A DNA stretch of 64,000 nt, taken from Setoptus koraiensis. Taxonomy: Eukaryota; Animalia; Arthropoda. Both the position numbers and the translations under genes were made by a program. The first letter of the stretch is position 1, and every line of letters starts with the position of its first letter. The notes beneath the pieces were generated by a model. It did not search any database. It was not told where the DNA came from and saw nothing but the letters and a program-made list of their open reading frames with translations. Below, piece after piece: positions 3,749 to 45,753 of the stretch. Where the stretch lies: positions 11,346,001 to 11,410,000 of the forward strand of contig CM106585.1 in assembly GCA_048013815.1 (NCBI GenBank), in the 5' to 3' direction.

Positions 3749-6243
3749 TCAGTGCTTATATGTCGGGTTCTTAAATGTAGATGTGGCTTGTTTGAAGATT
3801 GGATTTTCACCCTGGTTATTTGATTGATTAGGCATGATTGGAAGGAATAAAGTTTCATTAGCATTATGTATTACAAAACAGATTATGATGAGAGATTGTC
3901 AAGTGTTTCAACCCGATTACTTACGGTATCCCATTTGGCAGTTAACCTTTCTTGTTCAAATTTGGCAATCTCACGTCGATCGTGATACATTGTGAAGCAC
4001 TTCCATAATAAAAGGCCGAGAAGTCCCAACAAGAGTATCAAAAGTGCCAATATAAGCATAATTAGGAATATGGGTATAGGCGTTGGACAATCCTTCTCTT
4101 CGAGAGCATAAATTTGTGTGATGGGAGTATCGGAAGCTGGTTCAAGTGTTCGATATGTGAATTGATATTTGCAGTCGTCGTCATCAATAAATACACACAA
4201 AGTATCTAGATCGGTCACTTCTAATCTTGTGACATTATCAATATGAAAAGTACTGTTAACACAATGAACGCAATCCTCGGGTTTAATGGGGCCAGTTCCA
4301 AATGTCCTACAACGGACACAGTCCTTATATTGATCACATAATGTGGGACACGTAGGACATTCTTCGCAAAATTGTCCAGTATATTGGCGCTCTTCTGTCT
4401 GGTTACATCTACATTGACCACAAATACATTCACCATTTCCGGCACAGATTTTACCTGATTTTGGATCTCTGCATGTTGCGTCAGATTTGAGACACTCGCA
4501 AGCCTGGCCAGTCCAATCCTTTGTACATTGGCATACTCCACATTCGCAAGTTCCGTGATCTGGACCCGAACAGATCTTGTTGTCATGATGGAAACAACTG
4601 AAATTGTCACATTCACAATGTTTGCCATAAATTCTACTATCGGGGTCATTCTTCTTTTGTTGGCAATCACAAACTCCACACATGCAAACACCGCGACCAG
4701 AACACACTCTAGTGTCGTTACCGTGAACACATCCAAGCAAATCTTTGGTAGGATCACTCTCTTTTGCGTCACATTCACACAAGTGACCATAACGGGACGG
4801 TTCACAAGCGCAAATACCACAAGAATATGTACCGTGATTGGAACATTTGGGGCTCTGTTCAACACCCTGTTTATCACATTCACACTCGCACAAGATCTCT
4901 AAATCTATGATGAGGGCTTCATTCAATCCGACTGGATATATTTGAATAGTTTGAAACAGGTCACTGTTGCGTTTGGGACATGATTTAACCTCTATGTCTA
5001 TGTCAAATGAGACAGTTGTTCCAACTTTGAGTCCGTTGCATGAGTTAGTTTCGCGACGTTTCTCATTGACACAATGCGAATGATAGGTTAGCTGCACATT
5101 ACTAGTTGCGTTATCTTTGAGCTCAACACCTGAGGTAATTTCATGATATTGCTGTTCTATTAGCTGAACAATATTAGATGAGTCATTGTCTAGTCTACCG
5201 GCCGAGGAACCCTCTATGAGCGGAGTGAGTTTTTTGTAAATGTGATGCTGGTTAGCCGTAGAGGCAAAAATGATGTTCACATGGTGCTCTTGAGCTTTTT
5301 GATTAATCTGACTAATAGATGGATAATCCTGTTCACTGCTCATGGTGTACATTCCATTTTGATCTAGGTGACATTTTCCATCATTTGGATCTACAACACC
5401 GCCCAATTTGCCATCGCCGGCAGTGTGAACGCTAGCATCGGTTGTGTATAATAGCATCTTTCTTGATTTTGTTCTCCAGTTAACCTCTTGTTGACACACA
5501 ATACATTGCATGACGGCGTCTAGGCCACCCTCTGGCGCGTCCAAATTACCAGAGATTTGACTGGCGCTAACCTCGCGAGTAAAGCCTGATGTGTCTGTGT
5601 TGAGTGGCATGTGATTTCTAAAGCCATATGGTGCGGCACAGTCTGGGCAGGGTGCCTTGAGTTTCTCTGGTACAGTGCTGACATAGGGCATTAGAACTTT
5701 GTCGACAAACGAACCAAATCCTAACCTAAAATTACTGGTTATACGTTGCATATTTGCCGCCAATTGATTACCTAATTCAGCCAATTTGGCCTTGTCGTCG
5801 GCCATAGATTTAGACAGGTCCATCAGATAGTACAGATCAACGGGATAATCAACAACTTGTTTATATTGTAGTGTTACGGTCTTTGGCGAGTGTGGTGGCA
5901 GCTTTAGAGAGATCCTTTGCGGTTTCAATTGAATAACGTCCTCTTCGCTATCCGTTTTGTTGCTCAGCTCCGAGTCTATGAGGGTTGACATTTCTGGAAG
6001 TGGCCGAACAATGTCGGCCTCGTTACATTTGCCGGCTTTTAGATTGACCACGCTATCACATCTTGATTTGCTTCCATCGCCAAAGTTGTCCTGTTTGCAC
6101 CAGGCACATTCTGGCCCGGTGATAATACAATTGCGACACGATGTCTTGGATGTGCAATCGTTGGCTGTGACTTGATTAAAAGAGTATTGCAAGCATAACA
6201 CAATTGATAATAACAACAGTAATATTATTGACGGGCGTCGCAT
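3749..6243 (-). CDS. mys: Integrin beta subunit (betaPS/myospheroid-like, 793 aa); exons 6243-3925 and 3811-3749
   Basis: Signal peptide, PSI domain (CRNCIITGPECAWC), vWA MIDAS DLSKS, GNLDAPEGG, four Cys-rich I-EGF repeats and a TM helix. KWDT|GTAAGT donor and ccag| acceptor add the tail GENPIFKQATSTFKNPTYKH*. Confidence 0.95.
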
Positions 6244-6689
6244 GTTGTTGTTGTTGCTGTTGTCGTCTCTCTGTTATGTATATTGCCAAACAACAATTGT
6301 GTTACTAAAATAATAATAAAAAAAAATGTGATAATAATGATTGAATAAAAATGATGCGAGATGCTGGCGAGTATGTTCTGCAGTGTGGGTGCAAATAACT
6401 AATAATTAATAATAATCGATCACAGTGTTGCAGCTACAACATTTGTCATAATGATTTGCCTCGGCTCTGTCCGACTGTTGCTGTGTGCTGGCTTCTGTGT
6501 GCTTGAGTATATTAGGTAACAAGTGTATAAAATATTCAACTACTACAGTGTCGATCGGATATTATCGGCGATAAAGTTGGTGGCAAGTTTGTTGTAATTG
6601 TTGTAGTTTCACCTGCTGCTTTTACTTTTGCTGTTGCTGCTACAATTCACAATTTTTACTGGTATTACTACTGGCCGTCTGGCAGACTG

Positions 6690-9600
6690 GCTGGCTGGCT
6701 GTGTGTGTGTGTGAGTGAGTGAGTGTGTGTGCGTTCGTGCAAACAAAACTATGGGGCTCACGTAAATAAATATATTGATTTGTGCCTCAAACACTCATGG
6801 TCAGTTTGTGTTGTGACTTTGATAATTATATTCACTGGATGATGGTGCAATGAGAAAAAGAATTAATCATTTTGGTTGCATAATATCGGAGATAAGGTAA
6901 TTTTAAAACACAGATGGTGCATTGTAAAAGTGCAACAAAATGTGATGCTGCCGCTGCTGCTGCTGCTGTTGGTGCTTGCGCTGTGCGCACACATTGGAAC
7001 AAAAACATGGGATAGAGAGCGAATGAGAGAGCGAGAGAGAAATAGAAGCCAGTTAGTGGCATCAGTAATAATAATAAACAAACCGCAACAAAATCTCAAG
7101 GAATTCGCGATAAGTCGACTAGAGCACACGGTTGTTTTGTTCCGCCTTCTGTTGCGAGCGGCAACACTGCAAGGAGGCCAGCTCTCGTTTGTGTGTGTGT
7201 TGCTCTAGTGTAATTTTCAGTCATTTCTCCTTATAGGAGGCAATGTTTCCAAGAAATGCAACATGCGACTAGCGCTCCATTACAAGGAAAAGCATCATGA
7301 TGAATAAGTAAATGAGTTGCAATTGGACTTGATCCAAGTCGTTGATCTTACAAATTCGGTTGGCCCAATAGTTCATGGACCCAAATCCGAAGCGCTGGCT
7401 CCCCGCGTATGCCGCGGATATACGGAACGCCAGTGTACTGCTATGGGTAGTTAGCAGCACAATTAGTCAGAGCAGCTAGCACAACAGCGACAAGTGCATC
7501 AGTGAGTAAGCTGCGACTTGAGTTGTTGTTTGTTGTTGTGCACAAACACACACACACACACTCTTCCACTATCCATATATGGAGGATTGGCGCAAACACA
7601 CACACTCACACACAAACAGATGCTCATGGCGACGCTCATGGGCACAGGCGCACATGTTCCTATTCGATCGAATGGCAGTTGTTTATTAATTTTTAATTGG
7701 CCTGCGTCCTGCATCGCACTCGCTCTGCGCAACCGGTCCCCAACCTGTGCCGCTCAAACTGCGCCCCAGACTGCTAGGCGACGGCAGCGAACGAGCGAAC
7801 GAACGCAGAACGAACGAACGAGCGACGAACGAACGAGCGACGAACGACGAACAAGCGATAAACATCGAACGAACGACGAACACCGAACGACCAACGAACC
7901 GCTGTGCGAATTCGAAGAAACCAAAGGCAACAAGCAGGCTGTACATTGTTCATTTATTTCTCATTTCGTGATATTGTGCGTGGGTGAAACCATATATGGG
8001 CTACGGTACATGACCCGAAAGTCCACGGCTCAACTCGGCTCATGAGTTAAGTTGGCCAGCGCTGGCATCGGCAAGCCATACGTACAAGTGCGCCAAGGCA
8101 ATTGGGTGTGACAAAGCTCCGCTTCGCCATGCCAGCGGTAACAGTTTGCACAACGCAGCAGATGTAATTCATATGACTATGTGTTGTTTGATGTAACACA
8201 AACACAGTTAGTCTGTGTGCGTTCGCGTCTTTAAAAATCGAAATCTCTCAATGTGTGAGCACCGCTCGCAGGTCCATCAAGACCGGTGTGTGTGTGTGTG
8301 CGTTGACGAACGCAAACGCCATCTGATTCATATTAATCTCTAGCTCTCCTCATCGTTGCCATCATATTCCATTCTTTGCGTCTCGCCACTATCTGTCAGC
8401 CGTTTGATTGGTCCCTCCCAATGGCAGACCCACACACACACACACACACACAGAGTGTGTTAATAGAGCGAGCGTTCACACGAAGAGAGCACACTGCCGG
8501 CCGACTGCTGCTGGTAACTGCGCCTTAATCTATATGGTCGCTATCCCCTGAAAGTGTTATATTAGTTTTTCATGTTATGTAACGCATTGAAACAATACAT
8601 TAGTGCCATTTTGTGATGATAACCTTGTCTGTGTGTGTGCGTGTGTGCCAGCGTTAGACAGTGTGATAGACAGTCCATGTTGGTAAGCTCACAAAGAACC
8701 AGCATGTGCGAGTGTGTGTGTGTGCGGCGCTAGCTCGGCGACGGTGTCGGCATCGTGCGGCGCCTCTTGCAATCAGCGTGGAACCAGCTCCAATGTTTAT
8801 ACACATTATGAGTTTGCGCGCTGACTAGGCGCTTCGTTGGCATTATTATTAAGTAATTTCGGTTAACTATTATGTGCAGCACGTACGTAGAGCGCTCGAT
8901 GCGCACGCGCACTTGTCAACCCAAAGTAAGAGCTGCATACAGCGGCTCGGGTTGAGGGGGGGGGGCCACCATTGCTAATGAGAACTGTGAACAAGTGATT
9001 GGACAATCGAGCTGTGTGCGTGCCACAATATCGCCACCACCAGCCATTGCTGCTGCTGCTGCTGCTGCTATAATGTGCACGATCAACATTATTGTTCGGT
9101 TAGAGTCTACGCGTTTCGTGGCCGTCACCACCGACGACTGCCCAAGTGTGTATACACAGTTCCTCTGGGGGGAAACCAAGCGGGTGCGCGCGCGCGCCTG
9201 CATGACACACACACACGTCCAAAATGGCCCCAGAGAGCCAGAGAGCATAGACTCTATGCCATAGAGGGTACAGTAGTGGTGCAGCACAGTAGTAGCCTGA
9301 ATGCAATAGAATGAATTAGATGTAGAACGAACGTAACAGTAGCCCGAGCGCCACACACAATGGCGTGTGTGTGTGTGTGCGTGTGCTTGTAGTGTGCACA
9401 AAAGCGTGTTGTGGAAATAGCTGTAGTAACCATTGGGATCTTTCAAGTTGCGCTCAATTTCGCGCTAGTTTGTGTGATCTATCTATTGCAATATGTATAA
9501 GTGTTTGGAGCAGCAGTCCTCTGAGGGCTGGCTGCCAGGCTGGCATGTTGAGATTCCATCACTTCCAGCACACACACACACAGGCAGACAGGCAACAACA

Positions 9601-38004: not shown

Positions 38005-39591
38005 ATGGCATCCCCATCATCGCTTAGGCAAGATGCGCTCCGAATATTTCGGAGCGCTCTCAATGCCGTCAAAAGTGACGCCTTGCTACGAAATTCAGTC
38101 CAGTTCAAAGATGGAAAACTTATTGTTAATCCGTTCAGTATCCAAAATAAAAAATCGGATACACCCGAAAAGGAATTCAGTATTGATCTCAATCAAACAA
38201 CTTTACATATTATCGGCGGCGGAAAATCCGTCTTGCCAATGGCTGGCTCTCTTCTGGAGCAAATAGAGCTCAGTTCAGGACTCAATCCGAACTATGTCAA
38301 TGGCTGCCTGAGTCTACCCTTTGGGTCTAAAAAAATTGATAATTTCAGAGGACACAACCAAGCAACAAATGGTTCTGGCAAAGATCTCTTTAAATACTTC
38401 AATGTTGAGTGCCACTATGGTGCCATGAACAACTTGCCAGACAAGAGCTCCGAGCATGCCACAAAAAGAATTATGCAATTGATAGATGAGACCTGCAATA
38501 AGTCACCAGAAGAAAACCATCTTAGGAAACCTTTGTTCATTGTACTATTATCTGGTGGGGGTTCAGCTTGTCTGACGATGCCCAAGGGAATTAGTTTAGA
38601 GGAGAAGTTGAGAGTTATCGTGTCACTGGTATCAAATGGTGTGGACATCAAGAAATTGAACTCAGTCAGACAGTGTTTGTCAGAAATCAAGGGAGGAAAG
38701 TTAGCCTCTAGTATTGTTGGAAGAAACAAAGATGCGCAAATTGTAACTCTCATCATAAGTGATGTGATAGGAGATCCCATAGAGTTCATTGCCAGCGGTC
38801 CTACTTACATCAACCCCGATCTTACTGAGCCAGAACTCATACCCCATGGCACATCTCTGTCCAGTAGGAACGCATTGGATCTTCTAACTAATCTCAACAT
38901 TGACATGAGTCCTCAGTTGATTAAAATGTTGAAATCTTCTGATGACGGACTAGATCCTCGATTGAATGATAGAGTGCATAACTTCATTATTGGTAACAAT
39001 AGGCTAGCTTTGGAAGCGGCAATCAAGGATGCAAAATATCTAGGGTACGAAATCGAGTACCTTGGAAACGAAATGCATGGTGATGTCGATTTGATTTTGG
39101 ACAAATTATTGAATCAAGTAGATAATGTCGCACAACGACGTGATAAGAACTCCGATAAAGTTTGCGTAATCGGTGGTGGAGAGGCAACTGTCAATCTAAA
39201 GACGAAGACAGTCGGTCAAGGAGGCCGAGCTCAAGAAATGGCGCTGAGGTATTTAAGCAGGAAATTTGAGCAAGATACCAAAGCATTAGTTTCGAGTAGT
39301 AACATATACGACGATATATTTCTGGCAGCTGGCACGGATGGGCAAGACGGTCCCACGAAGTTTGCTGGTTGTTTATCGTCCTGGTCGCTGTGGGGCGATT
39401 TAAATTGTACGAAAGTTAAAAGTGAGATACAGTATTATGTTGATACACATGATTCGACCAATTTCTGGCTTAAAAACAAGAAAGAATGGCTCATCGAAAC
39501 AGGTCTAACAGGAACTAATGTGATGGATATTTATATGATTCTGTTAAATAAAAGAACGGATCTCTACGTCAAGCAGAAAAGTCACTTGTGA
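38005..39591 (+). CDS. GLYCTK: Glycerate kinase (GLYCTK, MOFRL family), intronless
   Basis: GGGKS, LLSGGGSACL, NSVRQCLSEIKGGKLA, ISDVIGDPIEFIASGPT, GGEATV, GQGGRAQEMAL, AGTDGQDGPT, TGLTGTNVMD. First ATG at 38005. Confidence 0.95.
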   Translation: MASPSSLRQDALRIFRSALNAVKSDALLRNSVQFKDGKLIVNPFSIQNKKSDTPEKEFSIDLNQTTLHIIGGGKSVLPMAGSLLEQIELSSGLNPNYVNGCLSLPFGSKKIDNFRGHNQATNGSGKDLFKYFNVECHYGAMNNLPDKSSEHATKRIMQLIDETCNKSPEENHLRKPLFIVLLSGGGSACLTMPKGISLEEKLRVIVSLVSNGVDIKKLNSVRQCLSEIKGGKLASSIVGRNKDAQIVTLIISDVIGDPIEFIASGPTYINPDLTEPELIPHGTSLSSRNALDLLTNLNIDMSPQLIKMLKSSDDGLDPRLNDRVHNFIIGNNRLALEAAIKDAKYLGYEIEYLGNEMHGDVDLILDKLLNQVDNVAQRRDKNSDKVCVIGGGEATVNLKTKTVGQGGRAQEMALRYLSRKFEQDTKALVSSSNIYDDIFLAAGTDGQDGPTKFAGCLSSWSLWGDLNCTKVKSEIQYYVDTHDSTNFWLKNKKEWLIETGLTGTNVMDIYMILLNKRTDLYVKQKSHL

Positions 39592-39763
39592 TACACCACA
39601 TACTGTTGTGTATACCATAAACATTTAGATCGTTGTTTTATGAATAAATTTGTTACAAAATATGTTCGTTATATTTAGTTAATGTTTGAATGTGTGTGAG
39701 TAATCTATTCTATCCATTGATGGCAGTTGATCTTAACAGTCATTATTTGTAATTATGTCGAAA

Positions 39764-42700
39764 TCAAGCTTGGCATTCTCTATAGAATTGAGCTTTCAAA
39801 TCTATGTCCTTATTGTATTGATCCATCTGACGATGGAGATCATCAATCAAATCCTGGTAGTCTTTAATCCTTCTCTCGTACTCATCAAAAGTGTCATCTA
39901 CCTCTCTCAATAGGTCCAACTTGATTAGGATATCACCCGCTAGTTGATGTGCATCATTCTTAAGTTTCTCGGCCCGGTCTTTCATTTCGCCACTATGCTT
40001 GGCTTTATTGCGCAATTTTTCTTCCGCTAATTTGGCCTTCAACGCTAGCTCATCAGTATATTTGCCCGCCTGATCGGCCAACTTGGTTGCATCTTGAACA
40101 GCCCCTTGAGCTTGAGATACATATAACTCGTTTTGAGCATATATCTGTCTCAATTTGTCCAATCTGTCGCGCAATTTTTTAACCGCCTCATCCAACTGAT
40201 GCACTATTGACACTAGATACTCCGCTTGCTGGCTGATTTCAGTCAGATCGGCATGGGCCCCATCTAACTCCATTTGGGCAGCTGCAATAGCCTGAGCTGC
40301 CCTCGTTTGTTCTATTGCGGCCAATTTAAGCATATTTAACACTTGTTCGACGATGTCCAAAATGTTGTCCGCTAATTCTTTAGCTCTGTCCGCTTGTTGG
40401 TGCAACTGTTGGGCTGTATTTAGATCGCCAGCGGTTTCTTTCAAAATCTTGTCTATGTTTGTGAGGCTAGATATTGTCTCATTTATCTTCCTGGCCAAAT
40501 CTAAAATTTGTTCTGGTTTCAGAGATGTTTGCAATTGAAGACACTCGGTACCATAGACTCTCACCTCGGCCGGTCTAGAGCCATGCAACACAATAAATTT
40601 TTCTATGTCATCCATGATACCGCCCATATCTTTGCCAACCTTGTCGAATTTAGACTTAGATATCTCACAATCGCTTAAAACTAACTTCGATTGGCGTAGA
40701 GCGATCTCGCTAAGATTTCTTGCATCGCCCAGGCGATCAAAGAGTGATTTCGTGATATTATACTTTTGATCGATTAGTGTCATAGCTTGTTGAGCCAAAT
40801 CCAGAGCATTACTTGCTCGAGTTGTGGCTCCCTCGGAGCAACTCAATCCACCTGTGCCAGACGATAAAATAAATTGTTGTTAATATACTCGAAATGTACT
40901 TACACAACGGACACTCATGTCAATCAGAGATTGTAATGACACTTACCGCATTTATTACAGCCGGCGCCACCGCATAACTGATCGCACGTATTAATCGATG
41001 CATTCGAGGCACAAACTTGCTGATTGATACCTGGTATGTTAGCCTCAAGTTCGGATATGCGCTTGGCAAATTGGGCCAGTAGAGCTTCGTTTTGTAAGCT
41101 AGAGCTGTTGTACTTGGCCGCCGCCGTTGCCAGCATATTCTCTGTGGCTCGTCGCTTTTGTTCTGATTCCAGCAGTATTGGTTTCGACTCTCTGGCTCTC
41201 TTTTCCGCTTCACGACTCTTATTTTGTGAATCTAAAATAATGGCGTAGGCCCCATCAACATTGGCCTCCTGCAGTTGTGTGGCACTCTCCCTCAACTTAT
41301 CAGTTTCAAGGGCCAACAGTTCTGCCATCCTCTCCATTTCACGAAGTGACGCCATTACCGCATTTGTCCTGTTAGTTGTAGATTCGGCATCTCTCTCGTA
41401 TTCCACCAATAGTTTCTCGATTGCCTTTAATTTGGCCGACAACTCAGCTATCTGTCTGGCCAGTTCGCTAATGACATTTGGATCAAGCTTTTGATTGTCC
41501 AATATCTCTTGAATACGATTCAATTTTGCCTCAATGTCAGCAAACTCCTTGGCGTATGCCCCCGGAGTACCTATCTCCATCAATAGTTTTACCTTGTCCA
41601 AAAGAGCTTGAGTTTCATTACGCATTGCTTGAATAATTTTGTCCCACTGTTCGAAGCATTCGCCACACGATTCACAATTTGGCCACCTACCAATATATCC
41701 GCGAGCACATTTGTCACATTTGGCCCCACCAATACCAGTCAAACAACGACAAGCGCCTGTTTTATTGTCACACACTAAACTCAGAGAGCCCTCGCGATTA
41801 CATTGACAAGTTTGACAGCGCTGTTTTGGGTCGCCATAGGTACCGTCGGCGCATTGATCACATCGGCGGCCACCGAAGCCGGGTTTGCATTGGCAAGCAC
41901 CATCAAAGTCGTTACAATCCTGAGACAATGAACCTTGCAGATCACAATTACAAGCTTCACAGCCCTTACCACTAGAGAATTTATAATAATGCGCTTGACA
42001 TTTTCCACAATCCAATCCAGTTACATTTGATAGGCACGGGCACTGACCAGTTAGGTGATTACAAACGCCACCATTGGCATCTGTACCCAACTTGTTGCAT
42101 AAACATTGTCTGCACTGCTGCTTTGTTGCGTCGCCAGCAAATCCCGATTTGCATCTTTCACAACTGTCACCTTCGGTATTGTAAAGACATTTTAAACATT
42201 TACCTGTATCTGGATCACAATTTCCTAAATCCGTAACATCAACATTGTTATTGCAGGTACATTTCTTGCATCCACTAATTGGACTTCCGTATGAGTTGGC
42301 GGGACACGTTGTTGGTTGCAAATCAACGTTTGCTTGATCTGGTGATGCTGTCGGAGATGTGAAACTATTTAGCAATGAAGTGGAAATATATTCTTCCTTC
42401 GCAGGGGGGCTGCTACTACCACTTTTGGGGTTCTTAGGAACAATTGGCTTGCTGTCAACCACGTTTTCCTCAGTGATTGTTGTTATTCGTCTAATAATTT
42501 CTTCAGAGTATTGATTGTTATTGTTATTGACGACTCCTGTTGGCAATTGGTTAGCTTGCTGAGATTTTGGCTCTACGGAGCCACCTAAAGCGGTATTAGT
42601 TGACCAAGAGTACCTCGTTTCAATAGGTAATTGGTCATCCTGCTGTGTAGTAACGGTCTTTTTATATGTTGTAGTAGAATAAGATTTATCCGGCTGACCG

Positions 42701-42876
42701 CCTGTTTGTCGTTTTTGATTATTAGAGCTTCTATAATGAGCATCGTGATTAGATTCCGTATAATCGATATGATTTGATTTGAATTGGTGATAGCTAGACT
42801 CCGAGATATTTATGGTGTAGCCTATTGATAGATAAATTACCAGAAGATGGTATGTGCAAAATTTTATGTCCATCAT
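39764..42876 (-). CDS. Short laminin beta-chain protein (1005 aa): signal peptide, novel low-complexity N-terminus, about 4.5 LE repeats and a full coiled-coil; exons 42876-40947 and 40851-39764
   Basis: LE repeats (CTCNNNVD..GNCDPDTGKCLKCLYNTEG..C) lead into CGECFEQWD. The beta-specific alpha/knob segment CGGAGCNKCG|GLSCSEGA is joined across a 95 nt GT-AG intron. C-terminus ends in YRECQA. No LN or L4/IV domain is present. Confidence 0.88.
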
Positions 42877-44250
42877 TGTTCGTAATGTTTTCCCTCGCAG
42901 GGATTCTCAGAGTTTAAATCTTCAACGACAATATAAATGCCTCCGAATAACTAGCGATTATTCGCAATAGCATCTTATGGAGCGTCTATGATTACGCTTT
43001 CAATTACATGGAATAACTTTATCCATATGTCCAAATATAGCTTTCGCTCAGTTGCTTGTTAGCTCAATCACTTATACAACAGATGGTTATTCTATGGCTT
43101 GGATTGTAATACCAAGATTCAAGTGAAGAGGGAGGAAGAAACTAGTTTGTATATAAGAATGCTCGCGCTAAAAAGTCGTGGGCGTCATGGGCTGAGCTCT
43201 TTAAAGTTCGCAGTGCTTATAGTTATAAATGCTAACCGAAGATTTAGATTTGCTATGTTCGATAAAGGGCTCTTTTCTTTTATATCTAGTTTAATTTCAA
43301 TCGCCCATAGCTCTCGTAACCCATCACGAGATATATGGCCCTAAAATTTAACACCCTATAAGCTTGGTGGAATCTAATCTTATTATCGAGATGTAGGGTA
43401 AGTTGTATGTTGATGTCCATGGTCCGGCTATTCAACCAATATTTGTTTAGCCCGTTGTGTGGGACTGTAAATTATCTAAAAAAGTTCTTAACAACAGCCT
43501 GATTGATTCTCATGACAAGACACTTCTAACTCTAGGAAGAAAACGCTCTTTGAGAGCAATCGACACACATGATTTGAATGAAGTTAAATCCAACTACTGT
43601 TATCGCCCCGGATACTGTTAAGCTATACTGAGGCCCATGATCGGAGGCAGATCATAAGTGTCTAGGATAGGTCACAAGATCTTACGAAAGAACCGAATGC
43701 AATAATCTATAATTTTCACCAAGGATTCTTCTGACAAGATTTTCTAACAGCAGGTGGAAGTTAACTACAAAAGATAGTTTCGGTACTCCACTTAATTGAA
43801 ACAAGACGCGCCTCTCTCAACAACTTGTTCATTCTGGACAAAAGTGATTGACACGGTTAAGAATTTCGCTTCAATTTCAGAATTGCACGTAGCTCCCAAG
43901 TTGATTGGCATTGTAATTTAAAATATCTAGGACAAATTAAAATTAAGTCAAAGAAAGTGTCACGTAAAGGAATGATTGAGTAGTATTTGGAGCCCAAATC
44001 ATATTGAAATGTAATGAACAAGAATTTCTTTGAAACAATTTCATATTCTTTATTTATGTAGGGGCAATAAAATAGGATGATCATTTGTCACATTTAGGCT
44101 AGTTATTGTCCAACAGAGAGGACACTCTCACGTATGACAAAAGTTGATGTTATCAATCTATATATAATCTACTTTCGAGTTGGTAGTAAAACGACGATGA
44201 GTCAACAGTGTAATAAAAATATTTCATTATGTTGAGATTGTGTGAATAAG

Positions 44251-45753
44251 CTAGTTGACCTCACGAATACCATTAGTATTGGTGATTAACAAATCGTTAA
44301 TACAATCTATTGTCTTCTTCAAATCTAGATCCGATGGTGAACTATCCCTAGAGGTAATAGGACTCTCTTTGACTTCAATGCGATCATCCTTTTCATTGAA
44401 TATAGTTAGCTTGCTATCCACACTGGATTCGAGCGGAGAAATCACACTTTGTCTGGCATCATGAAGATGAGGTTCGCTATTGTTTAGGTGAGTCATTGTA
44501 GCTTGTCTTTCATTTTGATCAAGCGCCTCTGAGCTAGTATACAAAACTTCATTATTCTGATCATCATCAATCTGTGTCACAATATCATGATTCATCATGT
44601 CATCTGATATGATATTCAAAAAACCATCGCATGCTGAACCAAGGCCAGAATCGCACTCCGACGAAGACGGATCCAATAAATGATTGTATCGCCTTTCAGC
44701 ATGTATCTCTTCACTAAGTGACTCTAGATCATTGAGGGTAGCCGCATATTTTCTCTTAGTTGAGACTATCTCCCGTGTTATGAGATCTATCTCAGCTTTG
44801 ATAGAATTTAGTCTCGCATTGAACCTGTTTGCTTCATCGAAATAAGGTTTTGATCTTCTAATGGAGTTGCTGAATTCTCTCTCAAGCTTACTGACGTGAT
44901 TTTGCGCGAGCAACATCTTCTTTGTTTTATCTTGATGCCTCAATTGACTTTCAGCTTTTAGTTTTTCAGCTTCAAGTAACCTTTGGATGGCCTGATTCAT
45001 TTCCTCACTACTTACATTGAGATTTTCTGAATGTAAAGCATGCATTGAGCATTTAGTTGCAGGGCTTTTAGACGGCAAATCGTTTGTTGTATTATCTGTA
45101 ATAAGATTTGACTCGGGGGCGTTTTGATCATTCACGACGATATCATTGTTATTGTCGGATTGATTTATAGTTGATTTGTCTGCAGCATTACACTTTGCTA
45201 TGGATTCTTTGAAACTTGAATTGGCATCATTAGTATTGTTTTCTTCATTTTTTGGAGTATTTTCATTAGTCAGTGCTGATGCTGCGCATTTGAATTTCTT
45301 TTCAGCTAATCTTATAGCTTCCTTGGCATCTGAGTGAAAGTTGTTGGCTTGTTCAAACTGAACACATGCCTCTTGACATTCAATTTGAGTTTGTTCAGCG
45401 GACAATTTGGCTGCAAGATATTGACGGCCTCTCTTAATTGATTGAATTCCTAGGGTCTGAGAGATAATTTTGAGTCGATCGGTGGATTGTTTCAGAGCAT
45501 TTCTGAATGTATTGTTGGATTCATCAAATTGTTTCTCCAACAAATTGATCCTAGCGGCCAGTTTATTGAGCAACTCGAGTCCGTCGCTGATTTTTACATC
45601 TACTTGTCCGCCGGCATCGGTGTCTGACTGACCGAGACCGGCTAATCTGGAGGTCGAAGCAGTTTCATTTGACTGAACAGATTGAGGCCTGCTCAACTGA
45701 TCATGATCATTGTCGCTAATAGTTACTTGTTCCTGACTTTTTTGATTGATCAT
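44251..45753 (-). CDS. SH3BP5: SH3 domain-binding protein 5 homolog (SH3BP5/parcas, Rab11 GEF), intronless
   Basis: LELLNKLAARINLLE, FEQANNFH..AKEAIRLAE, IRRSKPYFD and YAATLNDLESLSEEIHAERR match the SH3BP5 coiled-coil blocks. Confidence 0.9.
   Translation of the reverse strand: MINQKSQEQVTISDNDHDQLSRPQSVQSNETASTSRLAGLGQSDTDAGGQVDVKISDGLELLNKLAARINLLEKQFDESNNTFRNALKQSTDRLKIISQTLGIQSIKRGRQYLAAKLSAEQTQIECQEACVQFEQANNFHSDAKEAIRLAEKKFKCAASALTNENTPKNEENNTNDANSSFKESIAKCNAADKSTINQSDNNNDIVVNDQNAPESNLITDNTTNDLPSKSPATKCSMHALHSENLNVSSEEMNQAIQRLLEAEKLKAESQLRHQDKTKKMLLAQNHVSKLEREFSNSIRRSKPYFDEANRFNARLNSIKAEIDLITREIVSTKRKYAATLNDLESLSEEIHAERRYNHLLDPSSSECDSGLGSACDGFLNIISDDMMNHDIVTQIDDDQNNEVLYTSSEALDQNERQATMTHLNNSEPHLHDARQSVISPLESSVDSKLTIFNEKDDRIEVKESPITSRDSSPSDLDLKKTIDCINDLLITNTNGIREVN

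What the first reader, a model, noticed from the sequence alone, without database searches (positions are those of the whole stretch)
39764..42876. Laminin beta chain without the polymerisation domain, rebuilt with a new N-terminus
A normal beta chain (about 1790 aa) begins LN-LE-L4-LE. This 1005 aa protein has its own signal peptide and about 190 aa of T/S/N/P-rich sequence, then enters laminin mid-LE module (TCPANSYGSP) and keeps the whole trimerisation coiled-coil. It could still join alpha and gamma chains but could not form the LN-dependent network. That parallels vertebrate short-arm chains such as alpha3A and gamma2 of laminin-332, and I do not know of an equivalent in arthropods. It is either an extra paralog or a radically reduced sole LanB1.
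Basis: partly seen in the sequence, partly recalled or inferred. Interest (0 to 1): 0.75.

Follow-up and report, generated by a model that had tools for sequence, protein, structure and literature searches.

The report
Short laminin beta chain in mites
A tiny plant-feeding (eriophyoid) mite has a real, expressed and conserved laminin beta gene that lacks the network-forming head. The same genome also keeps a fast-evolving full-length beta, so the short chain is an extra paralog and not the only beta.

Summary
A two-exon gene on the minus strand (42876-40947 and 40851-39767, with a 95-nt GT..AG intron) encodes 1005 aa. The parts are a signal peptide, about 165 aa of new sequence, the last disulfide loop of LE9, LE10-13, and the complete beta coiled coil with its cysteine knob and interchain cysteines.

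There is no LN exon within 5 Mb. A spliced RNA contig confirms the intron, and other contigs match the genome across the start codon and the N-terminus/LE junction.

At least 23 protein clusters of 877-1106 aa share this architecture and the new N-terminus. One is a UniRef entry from Aceria tosichella. Against a sister species, dN/dS is 0.05 overall and 0.17 in the new N-terminus.

The genome also has a 2012-aa beta with an LN domain at C1:20.34 Mb. Its coiled coil is barely recognisable and it evolves about 7 times faster. There is also a third beta-like gene that is coiled coil only. So the window gene is an extra paralog, and it is the most constrained of the two beta copies whose rates were measured.

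Trimer assembly with alpha and gamma is inferred, not shown. LN-less alpha and gamma chains are known; I found no described LN-less beta. I class it as a new variant of a known kind.

Earlier notes from this scan describe shortened gamma and alpha chains elsewhere in this genome.

The parts
42799..42876 (-). Start codon and signal peptide (about aa 1-26)
   Evidence: This is the first ATG after an in-frame stop, with only 10 open codons upstream. There is a hydrophobic helix at residues 5-23 in the AF2 model. Orthologs also start with Met followed by a hydrophobic stretch. RNA contig X5 record 18 (42643-42892) matches the genome across the ATG.
42307..42798 (-). New N-terminal region (aa 27-190). 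It is mostly disordered but carries conserved motifs: KRQ, YKKTVT..P.ET.YSWS, IRRITT..TE.N, and in most orthologs SERISYNISI.
   Evidence: No Pfam hit at E <= 10 and no usable Atlas hit. The motifs are conserved in 21-23 orthologs, with T133 and N138 invariant. dN/dS is 0.17 against the sister species. AF2 gives a beta-hairpin at 67-95 with pLDDT about 82; the rest is below 50.
42262..42306 (-). Remnant of LE9: the C7-C8 disulfide loop (C191...C203), followed by the linker to LE10
   Evidence: C191, P192, N194, G197, G202 and C203 are invariant in the family. The stretch aligns with beta-1 residue ~955 (Bombina) and 974 (Sitodiplosis). The C7-C8 assignment uses the standard LE cysteine pattern (established knowledge).
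41674..42261 (-). Four complete laminin EGF-like modules, LE10-LE13 (aa 206-401)
   Evidence: Pfam EGF_laminin E = 1.6e-34 in 4 stretches, plus EGF_LMN_ATRN. Identity to arthropod LanB1/beta-1 is 50-56% over this region. All cysteines are invariant.
41014..41673 (-). Coiled-coil domain II (aa 402-621), opening with the interchain cysteine pair C404/C407 (CESCGEC)
   Evidence: It aligns in order with beta-1 domain II. C401, C404 and C407 are invariant. dN/dS is 0.012.
40947..41013 (-). First part of the beta knob (C622...CGGAGCNKCG), at the end of exon 1
   Evidence: C622, C631, C635, C640 and C643 are invariant. The same cysteine-rich insert interrupts the coiled coil in the canonical beta chains aligned in A4.
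40852..40946 (-). Intron, 95 nt, GT..AG, phase 1, inside the beta knob
   Evidence: The sequence is. A contig of run X5 skips exactly 95 nt here, with CT..AC ends on the plus strand. Most orthologs are intronless at this point and read ...CNKCGGLSCSEGATT... straight through.
39767..40851 (-). Exon 2: the end of the beta knob (GGLSC), then coiled-coil domain I through the C-terminal ...AQFYRECQA with the interchain cysteine
   Evidence: It is 26% identical over its full length to insect and frog beta-1 (E = 2e-34 and 8e-34). Residues 286-358 match the laminin beta-1 chain of the integrin-binding E8 fragment, 5xau_B. It is 68% identical to ortholog P0003.
39764..39766 (-). Stop codon
42877..44250 (-). 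Upstream intergenic space reaching the stop of the neighbouring SH3BP5-like gene. It holds no laminin-coding sequence.
   Evidence: The only ORF of 60 aa or more on this strand is 75 aa (43857-44084) and is AT-rich. The upstream gene at 44251-45753 corresponds to an SH3BP5-family gene in the syntenic sister contig. No LN match lies anywhere in the window.

Best explanation
This is a functional, secreted laminin beta paralog ('short beta'). It keeps only the C-terminal 47% of a LanB1-type chain: one disulfide loop of LE9, LE10-13, and the full coiled coil with the beta knob. A lineage-specific, largely disordered N-terminus of about 165 aa replaces the LN, LEa, LF and LE6-9 domains.

Shown: the gene structure, its transcription and splicing, the absence of LN exons, its conservation across many eriophyoid-like samples, purifying selection on every part, and the coexistence of an LN-bearing long beta.

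Inferred: it assembles through its coiled coil with the mite's gamma chain and one of its alpha chains, forming a heterotrimer with no beta short arm. Such a trimer cannot by itself complete the alpha-beta-gamma LN node and so cannot polymerise. It may terminate or dilute a network built by trimers that contain the long beta.

The short beta evolves about 7 times more slowly than the long beta. I found more than 20 clusters of it against one ortholog of the long form. It is therefore probably the main beta chain of these mites, but I hold this last point with lower confidence.
For: - **Gene model and RNA.** See: a spliced contig in X5, contigs that match the genome across the ATG (42643-42892), and one across the N-terminus/LE junction (X3, 42211-42474).
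- **No nearby LN.** LN domains lie only at C2:1.58, C1:16.65, C1:20.34 and C1:21.17 Mb, all at least 5 Mb from the window.
- **Beta identity.** The protein aligns in order with beta-1 from residue ~955 to the C-terminus. It matches the beta-1 E8 C-terminus and sits inside the beta clade with 100/97 family support.
- **Assembly hallmarks.** C404/C407, the knob cysteines and the C-terminal Cys are kept. C404, C407 and the exon-1 knob cysteines are invariant in A1, and the C-terminal Cys is invariant in A4.
- **Family.** There are 23 clusters of 877-1106 aa at 45-61% identity covering the new N-terminus, including Aceria tosichella A0A6G1S5Q3. P0003 is a single intronless 1002-aa ORF with unrelated genes upstream.
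- **Selection.** dN/dS is 0.054 overall: N-terminus 0.17, LE 0.049, coiled coil 0.012.
- **Long beta.** Its LN matches beta-1 at E = 1e-72. dN is 0.266 against 0.039 for the same species pair.
- **Polymerisation.** It needs all three LN domains (PMC11260871).
Against: - Trimer assembly is not demonstrated. The single complex prediction (alpha, gamma and short-beta C-terminal segments) scored 0.28, below the mark of 0.34, which counts as no verdict.
- It is unknown which alpha chain it pairs with.
- RNA evidence comes from assembled contigs only, which cannot define the 5' end or exclude rare isoforms.
- The function of the new N-terminus is unknown.
- The tree does not resolve whether the short and long beta arose by an eriophyoid-specific duplication (AU p = 0.077).
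- The long beta may look rare in other samples because of the length filter and short contigs.
Confidence: 0.72

Rival explanations
1. Artefact: the true transcript splices distant LN/LEa/LF exons into the LE region, or the junction near 42300 is a misassembly, so the real protein is a normal full-length beta.
For: There are no raw RNA reads and no long-read cDNA. Contigs cannot exclude rare isoforms.
Against: - No LN match lies within 5 Mb.
- The upstream 1.37 kb has no laminin-like ORF, and the next gene is an SH3BP5 homolog.
- Independent contigs from runs X3 and X5 match the genome across the junction and the ATG.
- The same N-terminus and junction occur in 20+ orthologs on separate contigs. 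One is a single intronless ORF with different neighbours.
- The N-terminus is under purifying selection.
- Introns here are about 95 nt.
Confidence: 0.02
2. It is a radically reduced sole LanB1: the only laminin beta of this mite.
For: It is the beta copy with the best-conserved coiled coil and LE10-13. For the long beta, only one ortholog was found elsewhere.
Against: This genome encodes a 2012-aa uninterrupted beta with LN (beta-1 E = 1e-72), LEa, LEb, CxxC and a beta-type C-terminus (hhalign E = 3e-5). That gene is under purifying selection (dN/dS about 0.17). A third beta-like gene exists at C1:6.89 Mb.
Confidence: 0.03
3. Neofunctionalised protein: the short beta no longer enters laminin trimers. 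It acts alone or as a homo-oligomer, for example as a secreted coiled-coil matrix or cuticle-associated protein, or as a decoy that holds back gamma chains.
For: Assembly is not shown. The new N-terminus carries conserved motifs of unknown function. The rest of the laminin set is heavily remodelled.
Against: Every cysteine that in canonical beta chains makes interchain disulfides is kept, along with the beta knob. The coiled coil is the most constrained part (dN/dS 0.012), as expected when three chains must keep fitting together. The C-terminal 73 residues still match the beta-1 segment of the integrin-binding E8 fragment.
Confidence: 0.15

Closest known systems
Canonical laminin beta-1 / Drosophila LanB1 (about 1790 aa: LN, LE1-5, LF, LE6-13, coiled coil with beta knob)
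   Same: LE10-13 are 48-56% identical. The coiled coil aligns in order to the last residue. The beta knob, the CxxC pair at the coiled-coil start and the C-terminal cysteine are all present. It falls inside the beta clade in both trees.
   Different: It lacks LN, LE1-5, LF and LE6-8, plus most of LE9. These are replaced by a signal peptide and about 165 aa of unrelated, mostly disordered sequence.
Vertebrate LN-less laminin chains: alpha3A, alpha4, gamma2 (PMC11260871)
   Same: It is a chain from a separate gene that keeps the trimerising coiled coil but has a truncated short arm without LN. It coexists with LN-bearing paralogs, which predicts non-polymerising trimers (for the vertebrate facts).
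   Different: Those are alpha and gamma chains. The review lists alpha3A, alpha4 and gamma2 as the LN-less subunits and names no beta. The mite chain arose independently in an arthropod and has a new N-terminal region.
Vertebrate laminin beta-3 (short beta of laminin-332, about 1170 aa)
   Same: It is a shortened beta chain without the LF domain.
   Different: Beta-3 keeps its LN domain: the hits named beta-3 carry PF00055. The mite chain has none.
The mite's own long beta (C1:20.34 Mb, 2012 aa) and mini beta (C1:6.89 Mb, about 684 aa)
   Same: All three have the CxxC start of the coiled coil and a Y..C C-terminus. The mini beta shares the intron position in the knob and is 30% identical over exon 2.
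   Different: The long beta keeps LN and LEa, but its coiled coil is unalignable apart from the last 70 residues, and it evolves about 7 times faster. The mini beta has no LE modules at all.

Membership tests
Laminin beta chain | N-terminal LN (domain VI) polymerisation domain | tested here: not met
   No PF00055 in the protein. No Pfam hit in residues 1-192 at E <= 10. The nearest LN-coding DNA is 5 Mb away.
Laminin beta chain | Tandem LE (laminin EGF-like) modules before the coiled coil | tested here: met
   There are four complete modules plus one C7-C8 loop, with PF00053 at E = 1.6e-34. They align in order with LE10-13 of beta-1.
Laminin beta chain | LF domain (laminin IV type B, PF21199) | tested here: not met
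   Absent from the protein, and no six-frame hit anywhere in the genome. The canonical beta chains all carry it.
Laminin beta chain | Beta-type coiled coil interrupted by the cysteine-rich beta knob | tested here: met
   Full-length alignment to beta-1 domains II, knob and I. Knob cysteines C622, C631, C635, C640 and C643 are invariant in A1, and the exon-2 knob cysteine is invariant in A4.
Laminin beta chain | Interchain disulfide cysteines: a pair at the coiled-coil start and one at the C-terminus | tested here: met
   C404/C407 (CESCGEC) and ...YRECQA are present. Their role is taken from established knowledge of laminin assembly.
Laminin beta chain | Groups with beta chains, not gamma or alpha, in a tree | tested here: met
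   The beta/gamma split is supported at 99-100. The short family sits among bilaterian beta chains.
Laminin beta chain | Forms a disulfide-linked heterotrimer with alpha and gamma chains | tested here: inconclusive
   The complex prediction gave no verdict (score 0.28, mark 0.34). This needs biochemistry.
LN-less (non-polymerising) laminin subunits, such as alpha4 and gamma2 | No LN domain, but an intact trimerising coiled coil, encoded by its own gene | tested here: met
LN-less (non-polymerising) laminin subunits, such as alpha4 and gamma2 | Trimers containing it fail to self-polymerise | not testable with these tools
   This follows from the three-LN requirement (PMC11260871). It has not been measured for this protein.

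The most novel reading that the evidence does not exclude
In most eriophyoid mites the short beta is the only laminin beta chain, and LN-node polymerisation of laminin has been abandoned. The window's species, which still has a fast-evolving LN-bearing beta and an LN-bearing gamma, preserves a transitional stage.

Several results fit this. The short beta was found in 23+ clusters, against a single ortholog of the long beta. An earlier scan note (s1-370759) says related gall mites have lost the whole gamma short arm. This genome gives no six-frame hit for the nidogen G2F or collagen IV NC1 domains.
Probability: 0.3. Interest if true: 0.8.

Novelty: new variant of a known kind. Interest (0 to 1): 0.6.

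Why it matters
Laminin polymerisation through the alpha-beta-gamma LN node is regarded as the first step of basement-membrane assembly in animals. The LN-less subunits listed in the review I read are alpha and gamma chains.

A conserved, strongly constrained beta chain without LN in the smallest arthropods shows that the beta short arm can also be dispensed with. It sits beside a decaying LN-bearing beta, a shortened gamma, two reduced alpha chains, and no detectable nidogen or collagen IV NC1 domain. Together these give a natural series for asking how little basement-membrane machinery an animal needs.

It also gives a concrete gene set for testing, by recombinant expression, whether a trimer with only two LN domains caps or weakens laminin networks.

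Tried and rejected
- **Complex prediction.** I folded the alpha C-terminal coiled coil (L024:7064-7966), the gamma C-terminus (L021:6830-7624) and the short-beta C-terminus (window:39767-40516). The result was no verdict: 0.28 against a mark of 0.34. This is not evidence either way.
- **AF2 model of the N-terminus** (alignment A2). Mean pLDDT was 49.7, too poor for a fold search. Only a hairpin at 67-95 is confident.
- **ESM Atlas and Pfam on the new N-terminus.** Nothing found.
- **Word search with mini-beta exon 2.** No relatives found. The length filter means this says little.
- **Scan of JGI metagenome contigs for long-beta LN relatives.** 322 pattern matches, none confirmed.
- **Timing of the short/long duplication.** The trees did not resolve it. 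The long beta is pulled toward the outgroup on a 1.9-2.3 branch. Holding short and long together costs 4.06 lnL, AU p = 0.077, so it is not rejected.
- **Second alpha candidates.** I checked C2:19.787 Mb and C1:19.35 Mb as possible second alpha chains. The first has a Caspr/neurexin-IV-type domain set, and the second looks like perlecan from its N-terminal sequence.
- **Literature.** The eriophyoid genome paper and preprint that I opened do not mention laminin, and the other paper searches found nothing on laminin in these mites.
- Following the operators' rule, I searched the spliced protein exon by exon and sent no joined exon 1 + exon 2 sequence to any search or fold tool.
Full report
**1. 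What is in the sequence**

On the minus strand there are two adjacent ORFs, 40924-42876 (650 aa) and 39764-40846 (360 aa). The sequence between them has a GTAAGT donor at 40946 and a CAG acceptor ending at 40852. Joining 40947 to 40851 keeps the frame (phase 1) and reads ...CNKCG|GLSCSEGATT....

Pfam finds four laminin EGF stretches (E = 1.6e-34) plus EGF_LMN_ATRN in exon 1, and no LN domain. The first 192 residues match no family even at E <= 10. The frame is open for only 10 codons upstream of the ATG.

**2. It is a beta chain, cut at a clean boundary**

From residue 191 the protein aligns in the same order with canonical beta-1 chains all the way to their C-terminus. Examples are frog beta-1 955-1411 and 1426-1780, and midge beta-1 974-1408 and 1430-1789.

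- The last 73 residues match the beta-1 chain of the integrin-binding E8 fragment, 5xau_B.
- The coiled coil is interrupted by the cysteine-rich beta knob.
- The cysteine pair at the start of the coiled coil (C404/C407) and the C-terminal cysteine (...YRECQA) are present. C404 and C407 are invariant in A1, and the C-terminal cysteine is invariant in A4.
- The laminin part starts with C191-PANSYGSPISG-C203. By the standard LE pattern this is the C7-C8 loop of the preceding module (LE9), so no cysteine is left unpaired. This assignment rests on established knowledge of LE disulfides.
- Four complete modules (LE10-13) follow.

**3. It is not an artefact**

- A six-frame search of the whole 48.8-Mb, two-contig assembly finds LN domains only at C2:1.58, C1:16.65, C1:20.34 and C1:21.17 Mb. 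The window is C1:11.35-11.41 Mb.
- The 1.37 kb upstream holds no laminin-like ORF. The next gene matches an SH3BP5-family gene in the syntenic contig of a sister species.
- Contigs of public runs laid on 39400-45300 show one contig in X5 that skips exactly the 95-nt intron, so X5 holds RNA and the gene is transcribed and spliced.
- An X5 contig at 42643-42892 matches the genome across the ATG. An X3 contig at 42211-42474 matches it across the N-terminus/LE junction with no differences. No joint from upstream was seen. Contigs cannot exclude rare isoforms.

**4. The architecture is a conserved family**

The exhaustive representative search and the word search found at least 23 clusters of 877-1106 aa. 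They are 45-61% identical and cover 78-100% of exon 1, plus a 92%-identical sister-species copy. One is UniRef A0A6G1S5Q3 from the eriophyoid Aceria tosichella, automatically named 'Laminin subunit beta-2'.

Ortholog P0003 is a single intronless 1002-aa ORF whose upstream neighbours are unrelated genes on the opposite strand. P0200 is similar.

The alignment shows that the new N-terminus is not mere low complexity. It carries these conserved motifs:

- KRQ
- YKKTVT.Q..G..P.ET.YSWS
- ETIRRITTTTLTEDNVIDNKP
- SERISYNISI

Against the sister species, dN/dS is 0.17 in the new region, 0.049 in the LE modules and 0.012 in the coiled coil, and 0.054 overall. The AF2 model predicts a signal helix and one confident beta-hairpin (67-95, pLDDT about 82) in an otherwise disordered region.

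**5. The rest of the laminin set: this gene is an extra paralog**

- **Long beta.** At C1:20.34 Mb a 2012-aa uninterrupted ORF has an LN domain that matches laminin beta-1 best: 4aqs at 1e-72, against gamma-1 at 2e-24 and alpha-5 at 3e-24. It has many LE modules, a CxxC motif and a ...YEKCQ end.
  - Its 780-aa C-terminal region finds nothing but its own ortholog by BLAST. A profile comparison recovers only the last 70 residues as beta-like (E = 3e-5).
  - It has no LF domain.
  - Its ortholog P0132 lies in the same sample as the 92%-identical short beta. For the same species pair the long beta has dN 0.266 and dN/dS about 0.17, against dN 0.039 for the short beta.
  - A search with the long beta found only that one close ortholog. 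All other hits were canonical beta-1 chains at about 30% identity, including those of other mites (Oppia, Leptotrombidium) and a tick.
- **Gamma.** The chain at C1:16.65 Mb keeps an LN domain (gamma-1, 8e-41).
- **Alpha.** The chain at C2:1.58 Mb keeps an LN domain (alpha-5, 7e-85) but has only one recognisable LG domain. A second alpha-like gene at C1:7.56 Mb has Laminin_B, Laminin_I and two LG domains, but no LN or LE.
- **Mini beta.** A third beta-like gene at C1:6.89 Mb has a signal peptide, no LE modules, the CxxC motif, a coiled coil 30% identical to window exon 2, the same intron position and a ...YRECQP end.

**6. Phylogeny**

In trees of LE10-13 the short family is monophyletic (100/97-100) and sits among bilaterian beta chains. 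The long beta forms its own very long branch (1.9-2.3). Gamma chains are clearly separate. Holding the short and long beta together is not rejected (AU p = 0.077). An eriophyoid-specific duplication is therefore compatible with the data but not shown.

**7. How it most likely works**

Polymers form only when laminins carry the three different LN domains. The known LN-less subunits are alpha3A, alpha4 and gamma2 (PMC11260871).

The short beta keeps every feature needed to enter a trimer, and its coiled coil is its most constrained part. The best reading is therefore a heterotrimer without a beta short arm. Such a trimer would not polymerise on its own and could cap or dilute networks made with the long beta.

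Assembly itself is an inference. The single complex prediction gave no verdict. Which alpha it pairs with, and what the new N-terminus does, are both unknown.

**8. Novelty**

The eriophyoid genome paper and preprint that I opened do not mention laminin, and the other paper searches found nothing on laminin in these mites. The sequence family is in public databases under automatic names.

It is a new variant of a known kind: an LN-less laminin subunit, but of the beta type, in an arthropod, with a new conserved N-terminus.

Two earlier notes from this scan, on a shortened gamma (s1-370759) and a half-size alpha (s1-338149) in the same genome, agree with what I saw. I confirmed only the parts stated above.

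**9. Limits**

- No raw RNA reads were available.

Noticed in passing
G000:C1:6889637-6891772, minus strand (L019:4631-5725 and 5810-6772): A third beta-like gene ('mini beta', about 684 aa). It has a signal peptide, no LE modules, the CxxC motif, a coiled coil 30% identical to window exon 2, an intron at the same knob position and a C-terminus ...AQHYRECQP. No relatives were found by word search.
   Followed up: partly
G000:C1:20334627-20340662, minus strand (L022:3627-9662): A full-length laminin beta (2012-aa ORF) with LN and many LE modules but no LF domain. Its coiled coil is diverged beyond BLAST recognition and has poly-Q and low-complexity inserts. It evolves about 7 times faster (dN) than the short beta for the same species pair. 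Only one close ortholog was found.
   Followed up: partly
G000:C1:7557222-7560986, minus strand (L033:4222-7986): A second alpha-like laminin chain of 1255 aa: signal peptide, Laminin_B (L4), Laminin_I coiled coil and two LG domains, with no LN or LE modules. This is an alpha4-like layout in an arthropod.
   Followed up: partly
G000:C2:1576987-1582689 (L024:2987-8689): An LN-bearing alpha chain (LN best match alpha-5) with about six LE modules and only one recognisable LG domain before the stop.
   Followed up: partly
Whole assembly G000: Six-frame HMM searches found no collagen IV NC1 (PF01413) domain and no nidogen G2F (PF07474) domain, while LN, LG and collagen triple-helix repeats were found readily. 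Collagen-repeat ORFs at C1:9852485-9857989 (1835 aa) and C1:9882447-9887901 have no C4 domain. The tool warns that a blank is not proof of absence.
   Followed up: partly
window 42700-42720 (aa ~53-58) and alignment A1: A His-rich stretch followed by a conserved KRQ motif sits just after the signal peptide in most orthologs. It could be a dibasic processing site or a metal-binding stretch. This was not tested.
   Followed up: no
window 40852-40946 compared with orthologs P0003 and P0179-P0200: The 95-nt intron in the beta knob is present in this species, its sister species and the mini beta paralog. It is absent from most other family members, which are single ORFs. This could be either intron loss or intron gain within the family.
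   Followed up: no
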